Shown here in pieces: positions 1 through 52,100 of a stretch of 64,000 bases of DNA. The DNA is from Salpingoeca rosetta. Taxonomy: Eukaryota; Protista; Choanoflagellata. The notes beneath the pieces are model-generated. The model was not told the DNA's origin, did no database searches, and saw only the letters and a list, made by a program, of their open reading frames with translations. Position numbers and translations under genes: made by a program. Every line of letters starts with the position of its first letter. Within the stretch, counting starts at the first letter, position 1. The stretch lies in NCBI GenBank assembly GCA_033442325.1, contig JAWQFM010000008.1, positions 372,001 through 436,000 of the forward strand, given 5' to 3'.

Positions 1-552
1 TGCTTGCGTTTTCACGCCAGTCGACGGACACGACGGAATTGGTGGAGCGGGTACTGGCCACTGTTCTCCACCCAGAATACGAGCCGCCACGCACAACAGG
101 TTGGCAGTGTATTGCGGCTGGTTGTTGGGTTGTCAGCGCGAGCTATGTTGTGTGCTTGTATCTGTGCGTGTGTCTGTGTCTGTGTCTGTGTCTGTGCGTG
201 CTTCTGTCTATCATCGCCTGTGGCTATCTCAAATTGTGTGTGTGGTTTTTGCACATTTGCCCCTTTTTTCATCAGCTGTTACCGCCCCTCACCGATTTGC
301 GTCATTTACTCCCCTCCTCGTCGTGATTGCAGATACAGGCACTGCTCGCTATTCGCTTCTGTCACAGGAAGAGCTTATGCAGATCATCCCATCGGCACAG
401 GCCGCCTTTGCTGCCGTAAGCAGTCGCGTTTTGCTGACTGATGTTGCCCTGGCAACTGTATGCGTGCCAGTGTGTGCCAGTGTGCGTGATTGTGTGTGCC
501 CGTGTGTGTGTTTGTGTGTGTGTGTGTGTGTGTGCACACACACACACACACA

Positions 553-586
<34 letters not shown>

Positions 587-2810
587 GAGACTCTCTCTCT
601 CTCTCACANNNNNNNNNNNNNNNNNNNNNNNNNNNNNNNNNNNNNNNNNNNNNNNNNNNNNNNNNNNNNNNNNNNNNNNNNNNNNNNNNNNNNNNNNNNN
701 NNNNNNNNGATTGGATAGTTTGCGGCCGTTTGGGTTTTGTGTGTTGTGTGAGTGTGTGAGTTTGATCCAATGTGTGTGAGTGTGTGTGTGAGTGTGTGTG
801 TGTGTCAGTCAATGTGTGTGTGTGTGTGTGTGCACTGGTCGCGTCTATCGCTTCATGAGTCACGTGACCCCCCATCCATGTCTCGAGTCACAAACCCGCA
901 AGCTCACACACACACACACACACACACGCACATCTGTACGCACAAACGCGCATGCGCAGGATGAGACGGTCACCGCTGTGCCTGCGCCCGTGAAAGTGTT
1001 TGGGGACATCCACGGGCAACTGCACGACATGCTTGCCTTCTTCCGCATCTATGGTGTTCCCCACACCATCCACGGTGACATTCACTACATCTCCTACCTC
1101 TTCATCGGCGACTTTGTCGATCGCGGCTCCCACTCCCTCGAGGTGCGCCACTGTTGTTGTTTAAGTTGTTGTTGTTGTTGTTGTTGCTGCTGCTGCTGTG
1201 TATGGTGGTATCACCAACGTGTTTAAGTTGTTGTTGTTGTTGTTGTCGTTGTTGTTGTCGTTGTTGTTGTTGCTGCTGCTGTGTATGGTGGTATCACCAA
1301 CGTGTTAGCATTGATGTCGTGTATGCTTGATCACGACTCTCGTGCGTGTACACTGCTGCTGTTGCCTGTGGTTGCAGGTCATCACGCTGCTCATGTGTCT
1401 AAAGCTGCGGTACCCCAAGCGTGTGTTTCTCGTTCGAGGTGAGCGCGCGCGCGTGCAAAGAGAGCTCGCAACGCCACCCGCTGTGTGTGCCGCTGCTCAG
1501 CGTCACGTTGCTGTCTTCGTGGCCATCTTGGCATGTTTCCATCCGCCCACACCTGCCGTCATGGCTCTTCTCACATATGTGTATGTGTGTGCATGCAGGC
1601 AATCACGAGGACTCGTGGGTGAACAAGTTCTTTGGGTTCAGGGACGAGTGTTTGCAGCGGCTGCCTGATGGCGTCATTGTGTGGCAGATGATCAACAAGG
1701 TTTGAAGCCATGGGTTGACTCTTGTGTGTGTTCGTGTACGTGTGTGTGTGTGTGTGCGTGTGCGCATGTGTGTGCATGTGTGTGTGTCTGTGCCGCTTGT
1801 GCGTAAGAGTTGCACTGTCATCGTCCTCTGCTCACAACTTGATGAACCCTGACGATGATTGCTTGTATGCGTGCATGTTGGCAGTTGTTTGAGTACCTGC
1901 CGCTTGGCGCAGTTGTGGACGACTCCATCCTGTGCATTCACGGCGGCATTGGAAGGGTGCGCTCACACCACACTTGCGTGCCTGTGTGCTGTTGCAAGCG
2001 AGGGTGCAGTCGTCTCCATGATCAGTGCTTGTGTACTCTCGCCCAGCATGACCTGAATGAATATGCACCATATCCACACGCGCCCCATACACACACGCGC
2101 AGGATTTTCGGTCTTTGGAGGACCTGCGCCGGATCAAGCGTCCATTCCGCCCATCTGAGGGCGATGACACACACGAAATCCGCGTTGCGCGAGACGCACT
2201 CTGGTCCGACCCAACCGAGAGCGACGAGCACCTAGGTGTGTGTGTGTATGTGTGTTTGTGTGTGTGTGCGTGTGTGTGTGCATGGAGGTTTGTTTGCGCG
2301 TTCTTGCATGCATGCATGCAAGTACGGTGCGTGTCCTCGCAGTCTTGGAGCCGTTTTTATTATCTCTCATCCCTGACACACACACACACACACATACACA
2401 CACGCGCGTGACATTTGGTGTCATTGCAGGGCTGCACGCAAGCGCGACACGCGGTGCCACCATTGTGCAGTTTGGTCCAGACATGGTTCGCAACTTCCTT
2501 CGGGAAAACAGTCAGTTGGGGGGGGGGGGAGAGGAGTATGGCGAGATGTCACACATCACTTGGCCGGTTTCATTCTTTCATCTGCCATGTTTTAAATTCA
2601 TATGCGCCCCACTCCCAGTCTGCTGCAGCCATGGTTGTATGTGCGTTTCGTCGCTCGTGCTTTCTGTCATTGTTAACACGAGCCCTTGTGTGCCCGGTGT
2701 GTACAGACCTGCAGATGATTGTGCGGGCGCACCAGTGTGTCAAGGATGGCTATGAGTTCTTTGCCGGGCAGCAGCTGGTGACTGTCTTCTCCGCAACAAA
2801 CTACTGCGGC

Positions 2811-2897
<87 letters not shown>

Positions 2898-3068
2898 CTC
2901 TTTGTCAGGTGCCTGAAACTTTTGATACCCGTGTGCTACCCCACCCACGTCCCCTCACGGTCGTTCATTTGTTTTCGTGCATTTTACCTCTCAGGTTCGG
3001 GAACGATGCTGCTATGCTCGTTATCAACCGTGAGCTCAGCGTCGCTGTGCACGTCATCAAGCCAGACG

Positions 3069-3124
<56 letters not shown>

Positions 3125-3413
3125 TGTGCTTGTGTGTGTGTGTGTGTGTCCGCGCGCTTTTGTGTGCAGCCTTGTAGTCGTGCCCAATGCAATGTTTTAC
3201 TGTCTGCGTGTCTGATACGCTTTTTGTGCGCTGTCTTCTCACACATCTCGTGTGAATGTGCGCGGCGTGTGCGGCATACAGAGCTATCTTGGTCTGTCAT
3301 CGTGGCAGCCACGCCAGCCCAGCAGTCCCCTGCCCCCATCACTCTGTGGCGGCGATGAAGATGAAGCTCCACACACCGTCACAGGCGAATACCCTCCCTT
3401 CAGTCTCGACTGA
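1..3413 (+). CDS. PPP-family Ser/Thr phosphatase, BSU1/PPKL-like catalytic domain (5'-partial, multi-exon)
   Basis: Frame-consistent GT-AG exons <1-99, 333-415, 960-1142, 1378-1438, 1599-1699, 1885-1956, 2103-2235, 2430-2510, 2707-2812, 2995-3067, and a probable last exon 3282-3413. The product has GDIHGQ, GDFVDRG, RGNHE, HGGIG, LWSDP, RAHQ and FSATNYCG motifs. Confidence 0.9.
609..708. other. Assembly gap (100 N)
   Basis: N run flanked by CA/CT microsatellite, inside an intron. Confidence 0.99.
1149..1306 (+). repeat. Intronic tandem duplication of a (GTT/GCT)n + GTGTATGGTGGTATCACCAACGTGTT unit
   Basis: The unique ~26-nt core occurs twice (about 1198-1223 and 1281-1306), each time after a triplet repeat. 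Confidence 0.8.
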
Positions 3414-4422
3414 TCTGCCGTGTGTAGCTTCTTTGCTTGTTTGTTGGTGGTGATGCTGGTGCACGCTTGCGTGCGCGTGTGTTGGATGAGCGATTGCATG
3501 TTTGATGCGCTGTGGTGCGTGTATTTGTTTGTGTGAGGTGTGCGTTGTTGCATTCAGCTAGGTTCGGACCGGATAATGCCGTTGCAAACGGGTGTATTGT
3601 AATTGCCTGACGGTATGTGTGTGTGTGTATTTTAATGCATAATTGCACGTGATTTGTTGTGGTTCCTTGCTGCGTGCTGCCTTGCCTGTCTTTGGCGTGG
3701 TTGATTTGTTTGCACTGTTGGTTGAAAACACAAGTAAAGCGTGCTGGGAAGCTGATGGCAAGGCAGAGAAGATCCACACAAAAGAAACGGTGTACAGTAC
3801 ACTACGTCGCCAAGACAGCAGTCTTTCGCTGAGCACAAACGCCCAAACACTTGCGCAAAGGGGGCGGGTTGAATTCGAGGGGAAGAATAAGAAAACTACA
3901 TCACACAAACATCCCGACGACGCGACGGCGACAGCGGCACCACTGTCTTACCTTGCAGTCAAGCACTTTGACCCGCTCGCCCGCTGGGTTGTCAAAGCAA
4001 GCGAGCGCACTTCAATGTCGGGGGTTGTGCGCGTTTGAACGTGTGGCAATACATTCGCACACGTGCTTGCTCGACTTGCAGCAGATGTGACGGTGGCCGA
4101 GTAAACACTGTTGGTGAGCGGCGTTGTTGTTGTTGTTGTTGTGTTGTTGTGTATGTGTGTGCGATTGATTGTAGGAGGATTCACGGCGTAGGGCCATTTA
4201 ATGCAGCACAATTCACACACATAACACGAAGAACACACTGCTCGAGGGTCGCTTTAAAGAGAGGGAAGCAACCATCATCGTCTCCAGCCCCACAACCAAC
4301 ACACACACACACACACACACACATATCCATCCAAAACAACGCACACACATGAACCCTTCTCGCACTCATACACACACGTGCGCGCTCTCCCACTCTGTCC
4401 AAGCCAAACACCCACACCCACA

Positions 4423-4522
4423 NNNNNNNNNNNNNNNNNNNNNNNNNNNNNNNNNNNNNNNNNNNNNNNNNNNNNNNNNNNNNNNNNNNNNNNNNNNNNN
4501 NNNNNNNNNNNNNNNNNNNNNN
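4423..4522. other. Assembly gap (100 N)
   Basis: N run. Confidence 0.99.
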
Positions 4523-4543: not shown

Positions 4544-7207
4544 TTAGAAGTACGCGCAAGCAATGTGCTGCATAATGTTGCGCAGCAGTGCTGCTGTCTC
4601 CTTCTTCTTGTCGTCGTCGCTCTTGTCCTGCAGCGCTGCTGTCTCCTTCTTCTTGTCGTCCTTGTCCAGCTTGTCCTGCAGTGCTGCTGTCTCCTTCTTC
4701 TTGTCGTCGTCGCTCTTGTCCTGCAGCGCTGCTGTCTCCTTCTTCTTGTCGTCCTTGTCCAGCTTGTCCTGCAGTGCTGCTGTCTCCTTCTTCTTGTCGT
4801 CGTCGCTCTTGTCCTGCAGCGCTGCTGTCTCCTTCTTCTCGTCCTTGTCCAACTTGGTCAACTTGGCCTCCAGCCACTGCAACAGGAACGCCTTGCCCTC
4901 AAGCAACCGGTACATGGCATCGGAGAGAGAAGTAGAGGAGAATACGTATGCAAACAGCAGCGATTCCCAATCCAGAACAACTTTTGCAGGAATCGCTTCT
5001 GCGTCGTGATGCAGCAGCCACTTGCGAGGGCGCTCCCGCAGCCGCGTGGAGTAAGATTCGGGAAGCGACGAAGGGGGGGTCTGTGCTTCATCCCGCGAGC
5101 GAGCCTTGCAGAGGAAACCAAAGTCGACGATGCAGCCGTTGCGCAGGATGTTGTGCGAGCGAATGTCACGGTGACAAAGATCCCGTTTCGACAAGCGGAG
5201 GAGGTACTCAGCAGCGGCCGCAAGCCCCGCTTCGTCCTTGATGCCCGTGCCATGAAGCGCCTTCTTGCCGTCGGTGCCCGCGCCCGTTATATGATTCGAT
5301 AGGTCGGGACAGGCAAACACGGGGCGTGACCGCTCGTGCACTTTCACCGTTTCCTCTGGATAGACGAGTTCCCAGCCCTCCCGTTCGTTGCTAGCCTCCT
5401 TGGCAGCGCCAATCTCGTGGCCGCCGCACACTTTCAACACCTCGCCGTTCACCAATGCAACCGTGACCGTATCCTCATCGCCTTTGTAGACGCACATCTC
5501 GTATCTCGTGGCAACTTTGGCAGACCTCGCCCGTGCTGCTTTTGTGACCGCAAGCTGCTGACGCTGATGCCCCTCCTTGCCGTTGTCTGCTGTGTCGGTC
5601 TGCGTGGCTGCCTTGTCGCGCTCTTCCTCATTCTGCACACCCCCATCAGCGCTATCGTTGGTGCCGCCGTTGCCACTGTTACTGTTGTCGCTCGCACCAC
5701 CGCTAGCTGCGGATGAATCTCTGTTGTCTCCGTGCTCCGGAATGGAGGTGAGACCGCTCCCCTTTCCCTGTGCCATGGCGTATGTGTGTGTGTGTGTGTG
5801 CGAGTGCGGAAGTGAGTATCATTGTTGATTGTTGAACGAAAGAAAGACGATACACGCACGCACACAGGATTTGTGTGTGCATATGCGTTTGTGTGCGAGG
5901 TGTGTCATGATGGCAGAATACCAAGGCAGCAAGCGAGCAAGACAGCAAGAAGACAAGCAGACAACAGAGTAAGTGGGCATCAAGTCACGCCTGCGACGGC
6001 TACCTGGGCAATGGCGGAAATATTCTCGTAATGCGCCATGTGCTCTTCGTCAAGCAGCCACGCAATGACATTCCCGAGTTTCTCCAACTAAAGTCCACAG
6101 CACAGGAAACCAATGTGAGCGCAGCGTCCAACGTGAATTAGCAGTATACAAGGCAACAGCCAGTCGACAGCAACTGCACATGCACACGTGCAGGAGCATG
6201 TGCCACACACACACACACACACAACGCACACCCTTCTTCTCTGTTCGCACATGCGGTGGCAACTCACTTTGGTGTCGCAAAGTTTTGTGTGGAGGACGCT
6301 GGGAAAGGCCTCCTTGCCGTGCACCTCATCGCCCAGCGTGCACGCGTACACGGACACGTTCTGCCCGCAGACGGTGATGGCAAAGGGAAACAAATACCCT
6401 TTCAAGTCACGCCACTCCGGCCCTGCAGACTTGATGGCCCGTGATGCGTACTCCAGCACCTGCGCCTTGGCAGCATCCTGTGTCGGCTCGCTGTCATCGG
6501 TCTTGAGCTCAAGCAACAGCGGGTAGAAGTCAAGGTTTGACATCAGACGCACAACATAGTCGGCGACAACAGCGGTGTCGGCCTCAAATGATGCATGGCT
6601 CTTGACGTCCACTTTTGCATCACCACAAGCCTTGAGCAGAGGTATCTTCATGCGGTCGTTGAACCGCGTCTCTGGCGTGCAAAATACGCCAGAAAAGCCT
6701 GCAGTGCGGTGGGCGTGCATGGTGCAGCGTTGGTGTGAGCGACAGAGAGACATCCCCTCAACGCTAGCACACCCGCGCACGAGCGCCAAAGACTCAACCA
6801 CCATGCATCAGCACCGACACACACACACACACACGCACACATGCCACGTTCTCTCGTGGAAAGGACGCTCACATGTGCACGTGTACACAGCAAGCAAGCA
6901 CATGCTCGACAACGACCTTACCCGTGTTTGTGCCCTCATCGACTGCCCGTTGAAACCCTTTGTTGTGCAGGTGCCAGTTGGGGCACAAGAGCTCGGCAGA
7001 GAACGGCTGCGAATAGACTGTTCTGTGGGCCGAATCCTTGTCCTTCTCCTTCTCCTTGGCAGCGCTGCTGGGGGTCACGCTTGACTCCAAATCTGCCACG
7101 AACCACATCAAACAGCCAATATGAGTTCAAAACAACCCGCAAGCAACGTGTCAGTCAACCAGGGTGCTCATGCACAGGGCTGCTCGCAGTAATCTAACAA
7201 CACCGAT

Positions 7208-7255
<48 letters not shown>

Positions 7256-8093
7256 GCATCAGCCCATTTGGTCACGCAGCCGCACATGAAAGGCTGAGTG
7301 AGACAGGCGCACCTTGTCGAAACTGCCGTTGCTCTTCGGACAGCCCTTTGCGTGTCACATTGTCAAGCTCCAGAAGGAACCCTTCCGCAACCTTCAAGGG
7401 CACCTGTGGCGTCGGCGTCTTTTTCTCATCCAGCACACTGCGGACTTGCTGGAGCAAGTTCTTGATGTTTTCCGTGTAGGGCTGCTTCAGCATGCTGTCG
7501 ACATAATTCTTTGCCTTGGGTGCGTTGTCGAGAGGGCCGGGTGAACCGATTTCGATCCCATGCCGGCCTGCAATTGTGCTGATCTGCTCGGCGAAGGCGC
7601 GGTATGATCGCTTGCAGTCTTGCAGAGTGCCCCCCAAAAGGCTCTCGTACTCTTTCATTGCTGCTTGCAGATATGCGCGCGCAAGCACAGCAGCCTGAAA
7701 GAAAAGAGGGCGGGTCGATTGAACGAAGTACAGCAGGTGCCCACAAAGTGAGATTATGGCTGGTGTGCACGTAGACAATTTTGGCGCCAAGAGGGTGTTG
7801 ATGATGTTTCCCCACCTGACACACACCCACACACCCACACACATATGCACACACACACGCACACACATGCACACAAACATACACACAGGTGCACACACTC
7901 ACACATACATAGGTGAGCACACTCACACATACACAGGTGCGCACATGTACATGCACATAACCATACACTCATACACGCGCCCTCTCGGGCTATCGCCACA
8001 CGTTCGCACACAACCCAAACAATAACTCACGTCGTTTGTCGACAGGCTTGTGATGTCAGACTCTTTGGTTTTCCTCTTTTGAGAGGTGGACAT
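4544..8093 (-). CDS. Crinkler/RHS-type effector-like protein: helical N-terminus, PD-(D/E)xK REase-like domain, low-complexity linker, divergent fungal-type (FunK1-like) protein kinase, tandem-repeat tail
   Basis: Phase-consistent exons 8093-8031, 7694-7313, 7092-6922, 6698-6268, 6087-6004, 5767-4544. REase-like: ADYVV...PLLLELK...AKAQVLEY. Kinase: VLKV..E, HRDIRSHNIL, IVDFG, DWESLLF. Confidence 0.7.
4586..4851 (-). repeat. Coding tandem repeat with a 93-bp higher-order unit (15-aa and 16-aa subunits, six ETAAL copies)
   Basis: CAGTGCTGCTGTCTCC recurs at 4586, 4679 and 4772. The protein alternates KKKETAALQDKSDDD and KKKETAALQDKLDKDD. Confidence 0.95.
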
Positions 8094-8312
8094 TGCGGTA
8101 CTGTTGTTTGAATCCTCTCCCTTGCATCGTGCATCATGTGCGTGTGTGTGCGTGTGTGTGTGCAGGCGTACATGTGTGAGAAACAAAAAGCGCGCGCATT
8201 TGTGCTAGCAGGCAAGTGCTTCGACAACAAGTGATGCTGGGCCGTCACGTTGCACACGCTGCGTGCGCTGCAACGCACGTTTGAACGGCTCCCTCTCCAT
8301 CGCTTGCTCAGC

Positions 8313-8412
8313 NNNNNNNNNNNNNNNNNNNNNNNNNNNNNNNNNNNNNNNNNNNNNNNNNNNNNNNNNNNNNNNNNNNNNNNNNNNNNNNNNNNNNNNN
8401 NNNNNNNNNNNN
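8313..8412. other. Assembly gap (100 N)
   Basis: N run. Confidence 0.99.
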
Positions 8413-8656
8413 CGAAGCCTGCCCGGCTGTCATCTGAGTGTCTGCGATGTCTGTTGTCTGTCGCGGGCGGTGGTAGCAGTTGATGTTGGTGGTGTTTCGT
8501 TTTTGAAAATCGAGCGAGGGAAAATGGCAAACCACAGGCGAAAAAATGATGATGATATACATGATTCCTCGGCAACAGCAGTTGTCTGCTTTGCTGTGGG
8601 CGTAACTGTCGTCGGCGGACTGTCTGTCTCTGTCTTGTCTCTGTATGGGCACGGCC

Positions 8657-9670
8657 ATGGTTCGACGTGCATCGATGTGCCGCAGAGGTGCTGTGGTGGC
8701 TGTTCTTGTCGCTATTGCTGCTGCTGCTGCTGCTGCTGCTGCTGTGCTCATGGCTGCACCCGCAGCTGCCGAGAACAACCACCACCACCATCACTCTTCC
8801 GACGACGACCACCACAACAGCTGCAGTAACAGCAACTTAACAAGTGCACTGTCAGCAACTTGAACAACAACAAGAACACCCGCGTTTGCGCAGGTGCGGA
8901 GCCGACATCCATGCGCAGCCTCGTTTGCTGAGTATAACGGCGGAGTGCGACGCAAATTGCTGCTGTGATCCGTCATGCACGACGCTGGTGAAAGCGCGCT
9001 TTGCCTACTGCAACACGCCAGACATCAAGCCCTGGCGCAGGTGCGTGTACGATGACTTCTTCGTCACCAACGAGGGCAGGAACCAGGCCATCCAAGCAGC
9101 AGAGGGCAGCAGCATCGCGTGCGTGCTGGTCGACAACACAAATGACCGCATCTCGTTCAGGGAGCCGCGCACGCCGCTCAATGACGCCGCGTTCCAGGCA
9201 TTCGCAGACGTTGCACGCCCCCGCCCCATATCCTTCAGCCTCGAGACGCTGCAGTACACGCCGGAGGAGGCCATCTTCATCCCGCCACGCAACACCATCC
9301 CACGCCAAGACCCTTTCCCCTTTTACGTCACGTATGGCGCGATCGTGTACATCACGCAGGACAGCACGACGCTCACACCGCTGCCTTTTCCCGCCGACAC
9401 GCTGCAGGAAGGGGGGTGCACCACGCAATCCAACGCGCGTCTTTGCGTCCGCGCCAGGCACGTGCACCCGCATCATCCCAGCGGCAGACGATGCCGAGCG
9501 TGTTCGGGCGATGTGCAGTCCTGGTGGCGACCTTGATGTACCGGTCCCGACAGACGCCGCGGTCCTTGCAACATACACAGGCATCACAACCAACATCCAA
9601 ATCATTTACAGTCAGTCGAGACCTTGGGAAGGAGGAGGGAGGAAGTGGGAAGTGATGTGGTGTTGTGTGT

Positions 9671-9720
<50 letters not shown>

Positions 9721-10390
9721 TGTGTGGGTGTGGGTGTGGGTGTGGGTGTGGGTGTGGGTGTGGGTGTTGTGTGTGAGGAGTGTTTGGTGTGTGTGTGTGT
9801 ATGAGTGTCTCATTGTCTGTGACTTCACCTGACCTCACATGACCCCGCATGACATTTTCCCGCCCTTGCTTTGCCTTTACAGGTGGATGTGATGGTGATT
9901 GCACCATCCGTTACAACGCATCCACCCAACGCTGCATCAACGCTGTGCAAAAGGTGTCGTGTATGTCTCTGTGCTGTGTGCTGCGTGTCTGTGTGCTGTG
10001 CCTCTGTGTGTGTATGTGCTGTGTGTGCATGCGCGTGTCTCTCTCTCCGCCCTTTGTTTCCGTCCTTCCCCTCTGTGTGTGCGCCTTCCCTCGTTGCGCC
10101 TTGCTGCCAACACCATCCCTCCATTGCTGCACGGCCCCTGGTGCCAGGTCGAGTACACCATCCAGCTTGGCCTCACTACCATCTCCTCCCTCAATGTTGC
10201 CGTGACCGTCGCTTCCTTTGACGCCTCGGCTACACTTCACTTGTCACCTTGGTACGGGCCCAAGCGAAACTGTCTCTGCAGAATAAAAATCAATTATTTT
10301 CTGGCGAATTTCAATGGCGGAGAAGGCAAACAACAACAACCAACCAACAACCAACCAACAACCAGCAGCAACCAGCGCAGCAGCGCTTGA
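8657..10390 (+). pseudogene. Tectonic-like (TCTN family) ciliary transition-zone gene, apparently frameshifted and 3'-truncated
   Basis: Signal-peptide-like start, Tectonic signature ECDANCCCDPSC...RFAYC...IACV, and later RCINAVQK|VEYTI...V.V. There is a +1 frame change near 9435 with no visible intron, and no RSGNPGY motif or C-terminal half. The family call is fairly firm; pseudogene status is uncertain. Confidence 0.6.

Positions 10391-45369: not shown

Positions 45370-52100
<6,731 letters not shown>

What the first reader, a model, noticed from the sequence alone, without database searches (positions are those of the whole stretch)
1..3413. BSU1/PPKL-type phosphatase in an apparent holozoan
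Seen: [62 protein letters not shown] and FSATNYCG. Known: these match the plant BSU1/BSL and alveolate PPKL catalytic domain (GDI-Y-DYLFLGD insert, HGGIGR, WSDPTEND, SATNYCG) rather than PP1 (HGGLSP, SAPNYCG), and PPKLs are generally described from green plants and alveolates. Inference: algal-derived HGT, or a wider ancestral distribution than assumed.
Basis: partly seen in the sequence, partly recalled or inferred. Interest (0 to 1): 0.72.

Follow-up and report, generated by a model that had tools for sequence, protein, structure and literature searches.

The report
Known choanoflagellate EF-hand Bsu1-type phosphatase
This is the 3' half of a real Salpingoeca rosetta gene for a BSU1-type serine/threonine phosphatase that carries EF-hand-like repeats instead of Kelch repeats, and this gene in this species was already published in 2021.

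Summary
All six peptides are at the stated places. They lie in 11 GT-AG exons (window 21-3413, + strand) that close into one frame ending at a stop codon. The gap at 609-708 sits in a microsatellite inside intron 416-959. The exon 2|3 junction aligns without an indel to every homologue, so no coding sequence is missing.

The genome is Salpingoeca rosetta. In a 52-row tree the catalytic domain falls in the BSU1-like clade (98/99), sister to S. rosetta's own PP1s. AU tests reject grouping with PP1 (p 0.022) and with the green-plant Kelch clade (p 0.0008).

There is no Kelch domain upstream. The gene has a long low-complexity region, then a degenerate EF-hand-like module with no canonical Ca2+ loop.

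Kerk et al. 2021 (PMC8249667) already list this S. rosetta sequence as a Bsu1 with EF hands, alongside Monosiga, Thecamonas, Basidiobolus and Nannochloropsis. So the finding is already known. The HGT reading is rejected and the wide-ancestry reading stands.

One small addition: a second, 5'-truncated copy about 92% identical lies on contig C68 and the end of C9. It has changes in conserved catalytic motifs, one of them otherwise invariant.

The parts
21..99 (+). First exon of the gene inside the window. It encodes the N-terminal helix region ahead of the catalytic core. It continues from an exon at G000:C8:371766-371839 (L009:9766-9839).
   Evidence: AG at 19-20 and GT at 100-101; frame continuous with upstream and downstream exons
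333..415 (+). Exon 2 in the window (ends ...AAFAA)
   Evidence: AG/GT bounded and in frame; aligns to the STPPase_N-like helix of homologues
416..959 (+). Intron that contains the assembly gap 609-708. The sequence on both sides of the gap is microsatellite.
   Evidence: GTAAGC donor and CAG acceptor; no residues missing at the junction; the C68 copy has an uninterrupted intron of about 320 bp here
960..1142 (+). Exon 3. It holds GDIHGQ (1002-1019), the BSU1-type insert GDIHYISY, and GDFVDRG (1107-1127).
   Evidence: Pfam Metallophos E 1.3e-6; best solved-structure hit is BSU1 9tp7, 64.5 bits, E 5.6e-17; phmmer against 1.84 billion proteins
1378..1438 (+). Exon 4 (ends in the R-G of RGNHE)
1599..1699 (+). 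Exon 5 (NHE, FGFRDEC)
1885..1956 (+). Exon 6 (HGGIGR)
2103..2235 (+). Exon 7 (LWSDPTESD)
2430..2510 (+). Exon 8 (substrate-clamp Arg, VQFGPD)
2707..2812 (+). Exon 9 (VRAHQ, SATNYCG)
2995..3067 (+). Exon 10
3282..3413 (+). Last exon: a 43-codon C-terminal tail and the stop codon TGA at 3411-3413
409..4127 (.). Segment that occurs a second time in the genome, about 92% identical: C68 reverse complement 1501-2060, plus C9:1940947 to the contig end

Best explanation
Window 21-3413 (+) is the 3' part of a single native Salpingoeca rosetta gene. It runs from G000:C8 about 366032 (ATG at L009:4032, if that is the start) to 375413, in roughly 21 exons and about 1630 codons. It encodes a PPP-family Ser/Thr phosphatase whose catalytic domain belongs to the BSU1/BSL/PPKL clade, the sister group of PP1.

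Shown here: every metal-binding and catalytic motif is intact (GDIHG, GDFVDRG, GNHE, HGG, RAH, the two clamp arginines, and the Tyr of SATNYC). The clade's signatures are also present: a 7-8-residue GD(I/V)xxxxY insert before GDxVDRG, HGGIG in place of HGGLSP, and LWSDPT.

The accessory domain differs from plant and alveolate members. In place of the N-terminal Kelch propeller there are about 1000 residues of low-complexity sequence, an EF-hand-like module of about 170 residues of the NCS/KChIP/CBL kind, and a poly-Gln linker.

Inferred: the enzyme is an active binuclear-metal phosphatase, and the EF-hand-like module acts in cis as a regulatory or targeting domain, much as Kelch does in BSU1 and calcineurin B does in trans for PP2B. 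None of the S. rosetta loops fits the canonical Ca2+-binding pattern. The one loop that is canonical in most of the relatives checked appears to be missing. Direct Ca2+ control is therefore doubtful for this species.

The gene is inherited from an old eukaryotic lineage of EF-hand-type Bsu1 enzymes and was not acquired from algae. It is the sequence that Kerk et al. 2021 already listed.
For: Gene model: 11 GT-AG exons in the window and 10 upstream, all in frame.

Organism: P0001 is PTSG_11524 [Salpingoeca rosetta], and most of it is encoded on contig C68 of G000 at 97-100% identity. The genome is 55.4 Mb with window GC 56%.

Placement: in the careful IQ-TREE (52 rows x 298 columns) the gene sits in a 43-row clade (98/99, stem length 0.66) with plant BSLs, Chlamydomonas, Prymnesium, Telonema and the Thecamonas EF-hand enzyme. 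That clade is sister to S. rosetta's three PP1s. AU tests reject the gene with PP1 (dlnL 41, p 0.022) and with the green Kelch clade (dlnL 49.5, p 0.0008). Identity over the whole domain is 45-50% to both Kelch-type and EF-hand-type members. Against S. rosetta's own PP1s it is 31-56% per matched segment. Exon 3 scores 64.5 bits to solved BSU1, and no PP1 chain reaches E 1e-9. The Thecamonas relative scores 284 bits to BSU1 and 215 to PP1.

No Kelch: none in the ORFs within 7 kb upstream, none in the Pfam scan of the upstream exons, and none of 63 Kelch matches in the genome lies beside a PPP locus.

EF-hand: exon L009:7514-7645 matches KChIP1 at E 1.5e-4 and CBL4 at E 1.4e-3, and all 40 PDB matches are EF-hand proteins. 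Five EF-hand Pfam models match below threshold, best E 0.0023. The same exon, and the conserved FRGTxxLLRL exon, match the N-terminal regions of EF-hand-type relatives.

Literature: PMC8249667 section 8 and supplement Note 3 give this S. rosetta sequence, including the exon join at ...SIRE|LFNVYSDGR that I derived independently.
Against: The splice model, especially the join around the third EF-hand position (L009:7854-8327), rests on frame logic and comparison with homologues.

EF-hand support within S. rosetta itself is weak: it is below the Pfam cut-offs, and no PROSITE PS00018 loop occurs in any forward frame.

Not every exon discriminates. Exon 9 scores slightly higher to PP1 (45.7 bits) than to BSU1 (43.9). 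Exon 7 finds no solved structure.

The outgroups in the tree are partial sequences stitched from tblastn matches to S. rosetta's own paralogues. Most ingroup rows are unnamed environmental proteins chosen because they resemble exon 3. When more divergent sequences were added, a quick tree kept the gene in the BSU1-like group at only 86% SH-aLRT.

The internal split between the Kelch side and the EF-hand side has moderate support (96/81 and 93/82). Whether the 1006-codon low-complexity ORF belongs to this gene, and where translation starts, is not shown.
Confidence: 0.9

Rival explanations
1. A Kelch-type PPKL/BSL gene that a choanoflagellate acquired recently from a green alga or an alveolate by horizontal transfer.
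For: The catalytic motifs HGGIGR, LWSDPTE and SATNYCG are identical or nearly so to the plant and Chlamydomonas Kelch-type sequences. Identity to Kelch-type members (45-49%) equals identity to EF-hand-type members.
Against: There is no Kelch domain upstream. The gene lies outside the Kelch-containing clade, and the AU test rejects union with the green clade at p 0.0008. The gene has about 20 spliceosomal introns full of the host's TG microsatellites. A Monosiga brevicollis counterpart with EF hands is on record (PMC8249667).
Confidence: 0.02
2. A fast-evolving PP1 paralogue that has converged on BSU1-like motifs.
For: PP1 is the sister family. Exon 9 scores marginally higher to PP1 than to BSU1.
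Against: S. rosetta has three separate PP1-type genes that form their own clade (99/97). The window gene is separated from them by a 98/99 branch. The AU test rejects the union (p 0.022). The 7-8-residue insert is shared with all BSU1-like rows and is missing in the PP1s.
Confidence: 0.04
3. A member of the other EF-hand-associated PPPs: PPEF/rdgC, which has C-terminal EF hands, or calcineurin.
For: It has EF-hand-like sequence fused to a PPP domain.
Against: The EF-hand-like exons are N-terminal to the catalytic domain. The genome's own PP2B falls in the outgroup. For exon 9, rdgC and PP5 score about 25 bits against about 45 for PP1 and BSU1. The Thecamonas relative scores 284 bits to BSU1, about 140-184 to PP2B chains and about 140 to PP5, and rdgC is not in the top 60.
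Confidence: 0.02
4. Contaminating plant, algal or alveolate DNA in the assembly.
For: None found.
Against: The gene lies 372 kb into a 2.02-Mb contig. Intron style and composition match the rest of the window. The same genome encodes PTSG_11524 of S. rosetta. Its PP1 matches the S. rosetta PP1 printed in the paper's supplement, not the Monosiga one.
Confidence: 0.01

Closest known systems
EF-hand-type Bsu1 phosphatases (Kerk, Mattice, Uhrig, Moorhead 2021, Sci Rep 11:13681): Thecamonas trahens XP_013758396.1, Monosiga brevicollis XP_001746829.1, and the S. rosetta sequence within XP_004995703.1
   Same: This is the same gene. The supplement's S. rosetta sequence matches the upstream ORF and the first EF-hand exon join. 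The catalytic domain is Bsu1-type, the EF-hand region is N-terminal, and the conserved FRGTxxLLRL motif follows the EF module.
   Different: S. rosetta has about 1000 extra low-complexity residues and a poly-Gln linker. It lacks the canonical loop (DTDGDGTISGSE in Thecamonas) that 6 of 8 relatives checked retain. The RefSeq model is fused to a nucleoporin domain according to the paper's Note 3.
BSU1/BSL (plants) and PPKL (Apicomplexa): Kelch-repeat PPPs; solved BSU1 catalytic domain 9tp7/9tp8
   Same: The catalytic-domain clade, the insert before GDxVDRG, and the motifs HGGIGR, LWSDPTE(N/S)D and SATNYCG. All catalytic residues are shared.
   Different: There is no Kelch beta-propeller. The gene falls outside the Kelch-bearing subclade.
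PP1 catalytic subunit
   Same: Sister family with the same fold and active site. Identity to S. rosetta's own PP1s is 31-56% per matched segment.
   Different: PP1 lacks the insert and has HGGLSP and SAPNYCG. PP1 has no fused accessory domain.
Calcineurin (PP2B + calcineurin B) and PPEF/rdgC
   Same: A PPP catalytic domain combined with EF-hand regulation. The EF module resembles the NCS/KChIP/CBL group.
   Different: Here the EF-hand-like module is fused N-terminally in cis. The catalytic domain is not of the PP2B or PPEF clade, and the loops look unable to bind Ca2+.

Membership tests
BSU1/BSL/PPKL in the strict sense (Kelch-PPP) | Catalytic domain in the Bsu1 clade, separate from PP1 | tested here: met
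   43-row clade at 98/99 with plant BSLs; PP1 union rejected, p 0.022
BSU1/BSL/PPKL in the strict sense (Kelch-PPP) | Signature insert GD(I/V)xYxxY before GDxVDRG, plus HGGIG and SATNYCG | tested here: met
   Motif table; exon 3 best match is solved BSU1
BSU1/BSL/PPKL in the strict sense (Kelch-PPP) | N-terminal Kelch-repeat beta-propeller | tested here: not met
   No Kelch in the upstream ORFs or exons. Of 63 PF24681 matches in the genome, none lies next to any PPP locus. The nearest on this contig is 47 kb downstream on the other strand.
EF-hand-type Bsu1 (Kerk et al. 2021) | Bsu1-type catalytic domain | tested here: met
EF-hand-type Bsu1 (Kerk et al. 2021) | EF-hand accessory domain on the same polypeptide | tested here: met
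   Exon L009:7514-7645 matches KChIP1 at E 1.5e-4, and all 40 PDB matches are EF-hand proteins. Pfam EF-hand models match below cut-off. An in-frame GT-AG exon chain links it to the catalytic exons. No RNA confirmation.
EF-hand-type Bsu1 (Kerk et al. 2021) | Functional (canonical) Ca2+-binding loop | tested here: not met
   PROSITE PS00018 pattern is absent from all forward frames of L009:3700-10000. It is present in 6 of 8 relatives used as controls.
EF-hand-type Bsu1 (Kerk et al. 2021) | Identity with the published S. rosetta entry | tested here: met
   The supplement text matches the L009 ORF and the 7049|7234 join. Only the first ~500 residues of the entry are held, so the catalytic part could not be compared.
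PP1 | Groups with PP1; HGGLSP and SAPNYCG; no insert | tested here: not met
PPEF/rdgC | C-terminal EF hands and a catalytic domain of the PP5/PP7/PPEF group | tested here: not met
   The EF-hand-like exons are N-terminal. rdgC scores about 25 bits against 45 for PP1/BSU1 on exon 9. No named PPEF was in the tree.
Active PPP phosphatase | Metal ligands and catalytic His/Arg/Tyr intact; measurable activity | tested here: inconclusive
   All motifs are conserved. Enzyme activity is not testable with these tools.

The most novel reading that the evidence does not exclude
S. rosetta carries a young, 5'-truncated second copy of the Bsu1-type catalytic region (exons 3-11). It is placed behind an unrelated upstream ORF (PTSG_11524) and has changes in conserved catalytic motifs, one of them otherwise invariant. 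It may be a chimeric pseudophosphatase in the making and not just an assembly artefact or dead pseudogene. Separately, the main gene's EF-hand module has lost every canonical Ca2+ loop. The choanoflagellate enzyme would then be regulated by something other than calcium.
Probability: 0.2. Interest if true: 0.3.

Novelty: already known. Interest (0 to 1): 0.15.

Why it matters
The finding shows that BSU1-type phosphatases are not confined to plants and alveolates. A second architecture, EF-hand plus Bsu1, reaches into the closest unicellular relatives of animals. That points to an old eukaryotic origin followed by loss in animals. This point was made in print in 2021 for this same gene, so the finding adds confirmation and no new knowledge. 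The practical gains here are three. There is a checked exon model across the assembly gap. The S. rosetta EF-hand loops are shown to be degenerate. A partial second copy is identified that could confuse annotation, read mapping or knock-out design in this genetically tractable species.

Tried and rejected
- Word search with the 1006-residue upstream ORF found nothing. The likely reason is that the RefSeq model, fused to a nucleoporin domain, exceeds the tool's length window.
- Two Pfam calls failed on coordinates or length and were corrected.
No RNA-seq or read evidence was obtained, and read laying was not used.
- Exon 7 finds no solved structure. Exon 9 does not separate PP1 from BSU1.
- The Monosiga brevicollis orthologue was not among the proteins retrieved. 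A choanoflagellate-only sister relationship could not be tested here.
- A larger quick tree with kinetoplastid, gregarine and insect sequences lost resolution and was not used for conclusions.
- P0001's first 34 residues do not map to C9. Placement of C68 in the C9 gap stays an inference from colinearity.
- An alternative reading frame in exon L009:8275-8327 would give an EF-hand-like loop (SSTFNGTVANME). It cannot be joined in frame to the conserved next exon at the strongest splice sites, and the chosen frame matches Monosiga better. It was set aside but is not excluded.
- No spliced (joined) protein was handed to any search tool. All database searches were exon by exon, by reference. The spliced model was assembled only inside local scripts, from window.fa and the fetched loci, for translation, local BLAST, alignment and trees.
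Full report
**What is in the sequence.** Reading window 1-4200 and its ORFs shows short coding blocks on the + strand separated by TG/CA-rich introns. Eleven exons lie at 21-99, 333-415, 960-1142, 1378-1438, 1599-1699, 1885-1956, 2103-2235, 2430-2510, 2707-2812, 2995-3067 and 3282-3413. Each is bounded by AG...GT. Together they give one open frame of 367 codons ending at TGA 3411-3413. Pfam recognises exon 3 as Metallophos on its own (E 1.3e-6).

**The gap.** The N run at 609-708 lies inside intron 416-959 and has microsatellite on both sides. The exon 2|exon 3 junction (...AAFAA|DETVT...) aligns with no insertion or deletion to EF-hand-type, Kelch-type, PP1 and PP2A sequences. No coding residues are hidden in the gap. 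A second copy of this stretch on contig C68 crosses the same intron without Ns. Between the same landmarks it shows only microsatellite.

**Organism.** The window is G000:C8:372001-436000 in a 55.4-Mb genome of 68 contigs; the window's GC is 56%. The best hit of exon 3 among 1.84 billion representative proteins, P0001 (98% identity), is 'hypothetical protein PTSG_11524, partial [Salpingoeca rosetta]'. Most of it is encoded on contig C68 of this genome, at 97-100% identity. The genome's PP1 on C17 carries the residues that distinguish S. rosetta PP1 from Monosiga PP1 as printed in a paper's supplement.

**Upstream architecture.**
- I fetched the 20 kb upstream. The 7 kb nearest the gene hold no Kelch repeat.
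- They hold a 1006-codon low-complexity ORF starting from an ATG (L009:4032-7049).
- After it come exons at L009:7234-7302, 7514-7645, 7854-7889, 8275-8327, 8526-8589, 8819-8903, 9137-9330, 9490-9553 and 9766-9839. All are GT-AG and all are in frame with window exon 21-99.
- Exon 7514-7645 matches five Pfam EF-hand models below their cut-offs (best E 0.0023). In the PDB it matches KChIP1 (E 1.5e-4), CBL4 (E 1.4e-3), centrins and NCS-1, and all 40 matches are EF-hand proteins.
- The same exon, and the exon that holds FRGTENLLRL, match the N-terminal regions of EF-hand-type relatives.
- A genome-wide scan with Kelch model PF24681 gives 63 matches. None lies next to any of the roughly ten PPP loci.
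- No forward frame of the region holds a canonical PROSITE EF-hand loop, whereas 6 of 8 relatives have one.
- The join around the third EF-hand position is the least certain part of the model.

**Classification.**
- Searches were run exon by exon, by reference. Exon 3 gave 2628 hits at E <= 0.001. Among the 59 hits of 330 residues or more, 7 carry Kelch domains and 6 carry EF hands.
- In local scripts I assembled the spliced model, took the catalytic domains of 42 full-length hits, and stitched eight PPP paralogues of S. rosetta from tblastn matches: three PP1-like, four PP2A/4/6-like and one PP2B.
- The careful tree (IQ-TREE, LG+C20+F+G4 PMSF, 52 rows x 298 columns) puts the gene in a 43-row clade with 98/99 support and a stem of 0.66. 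That clade is sister to the three PP1s (99/97).
- Inside it, a 10-row group (96/81) holds the Kelch-bearing plant sequences, a Chlamydomonas sequence, Prymnesium and Telonema. A 33-row group (93/82) holds the window gene with the Thecamonas trahens EF-hand enzyme and others.
- AU tests reject the gene with PP1 (dlnL 41, p 0.022) and with the green Kelch clade (dlnL 49.5, p 0.0008).
- Exon 3 alone scores 64.5 bits to the solved BSU1 domain, and no PP1 chain reaches E 1e-9. The Thecamonas relative scores 284 bits to BSU1 and 215 to PP1.
- The motif table shows that the insert before GDxVDRG, HGG(I/L/V)G and LWSDPT are shared by the whole clade and absent from PP1 and PP2A. All catalytic motifs are intact.

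**Limits of the classification.** Exon 9 does not discriminate. The outgroups are partial sequences. The ingroup was selected by similarity to exon 3. A larger quick tree lost resolution.

**Comparison with what is known.** Kerk et al. 2021 (PMC8249667, section 8) reported Bsu1s that lack Kelch but have EF hands in Thecamonas trahens, Monosiga brevicollis, Salpingoeca rosetta, Basidiobolus meristosporus and Nannochloropsis gaditana. They concluded that the two architectures diverged very early. Their supplement prints the S. rosetta sequence. It matches the L009 ORF and includes the join ...SIRE|LFNVYSDGR. Note 3 says it was taken from XP_004995703.1, whose N-terminal nucleoporin domain they regard as a mis-prediction. 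That over-long model probably explains why my length-limited word search found nothing. The finding is therefore already published for this very gene.

**Mechanism.** Shown: an intact PPP active site of the BSU1 type on the same inferred transcript as an EF-hand-like module. Inferred: an active Ser/Thr phosphatase whose N-terminal module regulates or targets it in cis. The loops are degenerate, so Ca2+ dependence is doubtful in S. rosetta.

**A second copy.**
- Window 409-4127 occurs again: as C68 reverse complement 1501-2060 (exon 3 region, about 84-91% DNA identity) and as C9:1940947 to the contig end (91.8% over 2937 bp).
- C68 stops at the equivalent of window 1186, and C9 resumes after its own gap at the equivalent of 1232. 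C68 probably belongs in that gap. This is not proven.
- The copy keeps every splice site and an open frame for exons 3-11.
- It has RGNHE changed to RDNHE, where the Gly is invariant in every other row that covers the motif. It also has an extra Val before GDFVDRG, and SATNYC changed to SATDYC.
- dN/dS between the copies is 0.30, from 9 synonymous and 9 non-synonymous differences.
- Its upstream sequence is unrelated, and RefSeq models it as PTSG_11524.

**Verdict.** Novelty: already known. Interest is low.

Noticed in passing
G000:C9:1940947-1943789 (L020:947-3790) and contig C68 (L002, reverse complement 1501-2060); equals window 409-4127: A second, 5'-truncated copy of exons 3-11 plus the 3' flank, about 92% identical. 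Splice sites and frame are kept, but it has RDNHE for RGNHE, an extra Val before GDFVDRG and SATDYC. dN/dS is 0.30. Its upstream sequence is unrelated and is annotated as PTSG_11524. C9 has its own assembly gap (L020:808-907) where C68 would fit.
   Followed up: partly
L009:4032-7049 (G000:C8:366032-369049): A 1006-codon low-complexity ORF rich in His, Gln, Asp and Ser with no Pfam domain, spliced in frame to the EF-hand exons. According to the paper's Note 3, the RefSeq model extends further upstream into a nucleoporin domain. The true start codon is unknown.
   Followed up: partly
window 50595-51941 (-) = G000:C8:422595-423941: A Kelch-repeat ORF (965-residue open frame, PF24681 69 bits) on the opposite strand, 47 kb downstream. 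It is unrelated to the phosphatase gene.
   Followed up: no
P0182 (Plodia interpunctella LOC128683592, 757 aa): An insect protein with a weak N-terminal EF-hand match and a C-terminal PPP domain. It forms a separate long-branched clade with unnamed sequences, outside the BSU1-like group, in a quick tree.
   Followed up: partly
P0006 (611 aa) and P0002 (975 aa): Environmental relatives with other layouts. P0006 has the catalytic domain first and a region after it that looks EF-hand-like by eye, ending in the conserved RGTSSLFRL motif; Pfam found no EF-hand there. P0002 has two tandem catalytic domains. Others carry FHA (P0018), LRR (P0126) or PH (P0011) domains.
   Followed up: no
window 4544-5776 (-): A 410-residue ORF with a tandem repeat of the KKKETAALQDK type next to a second assembly gap (4423-4522). 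Another first-reader note already covers it.
   Followed up: no
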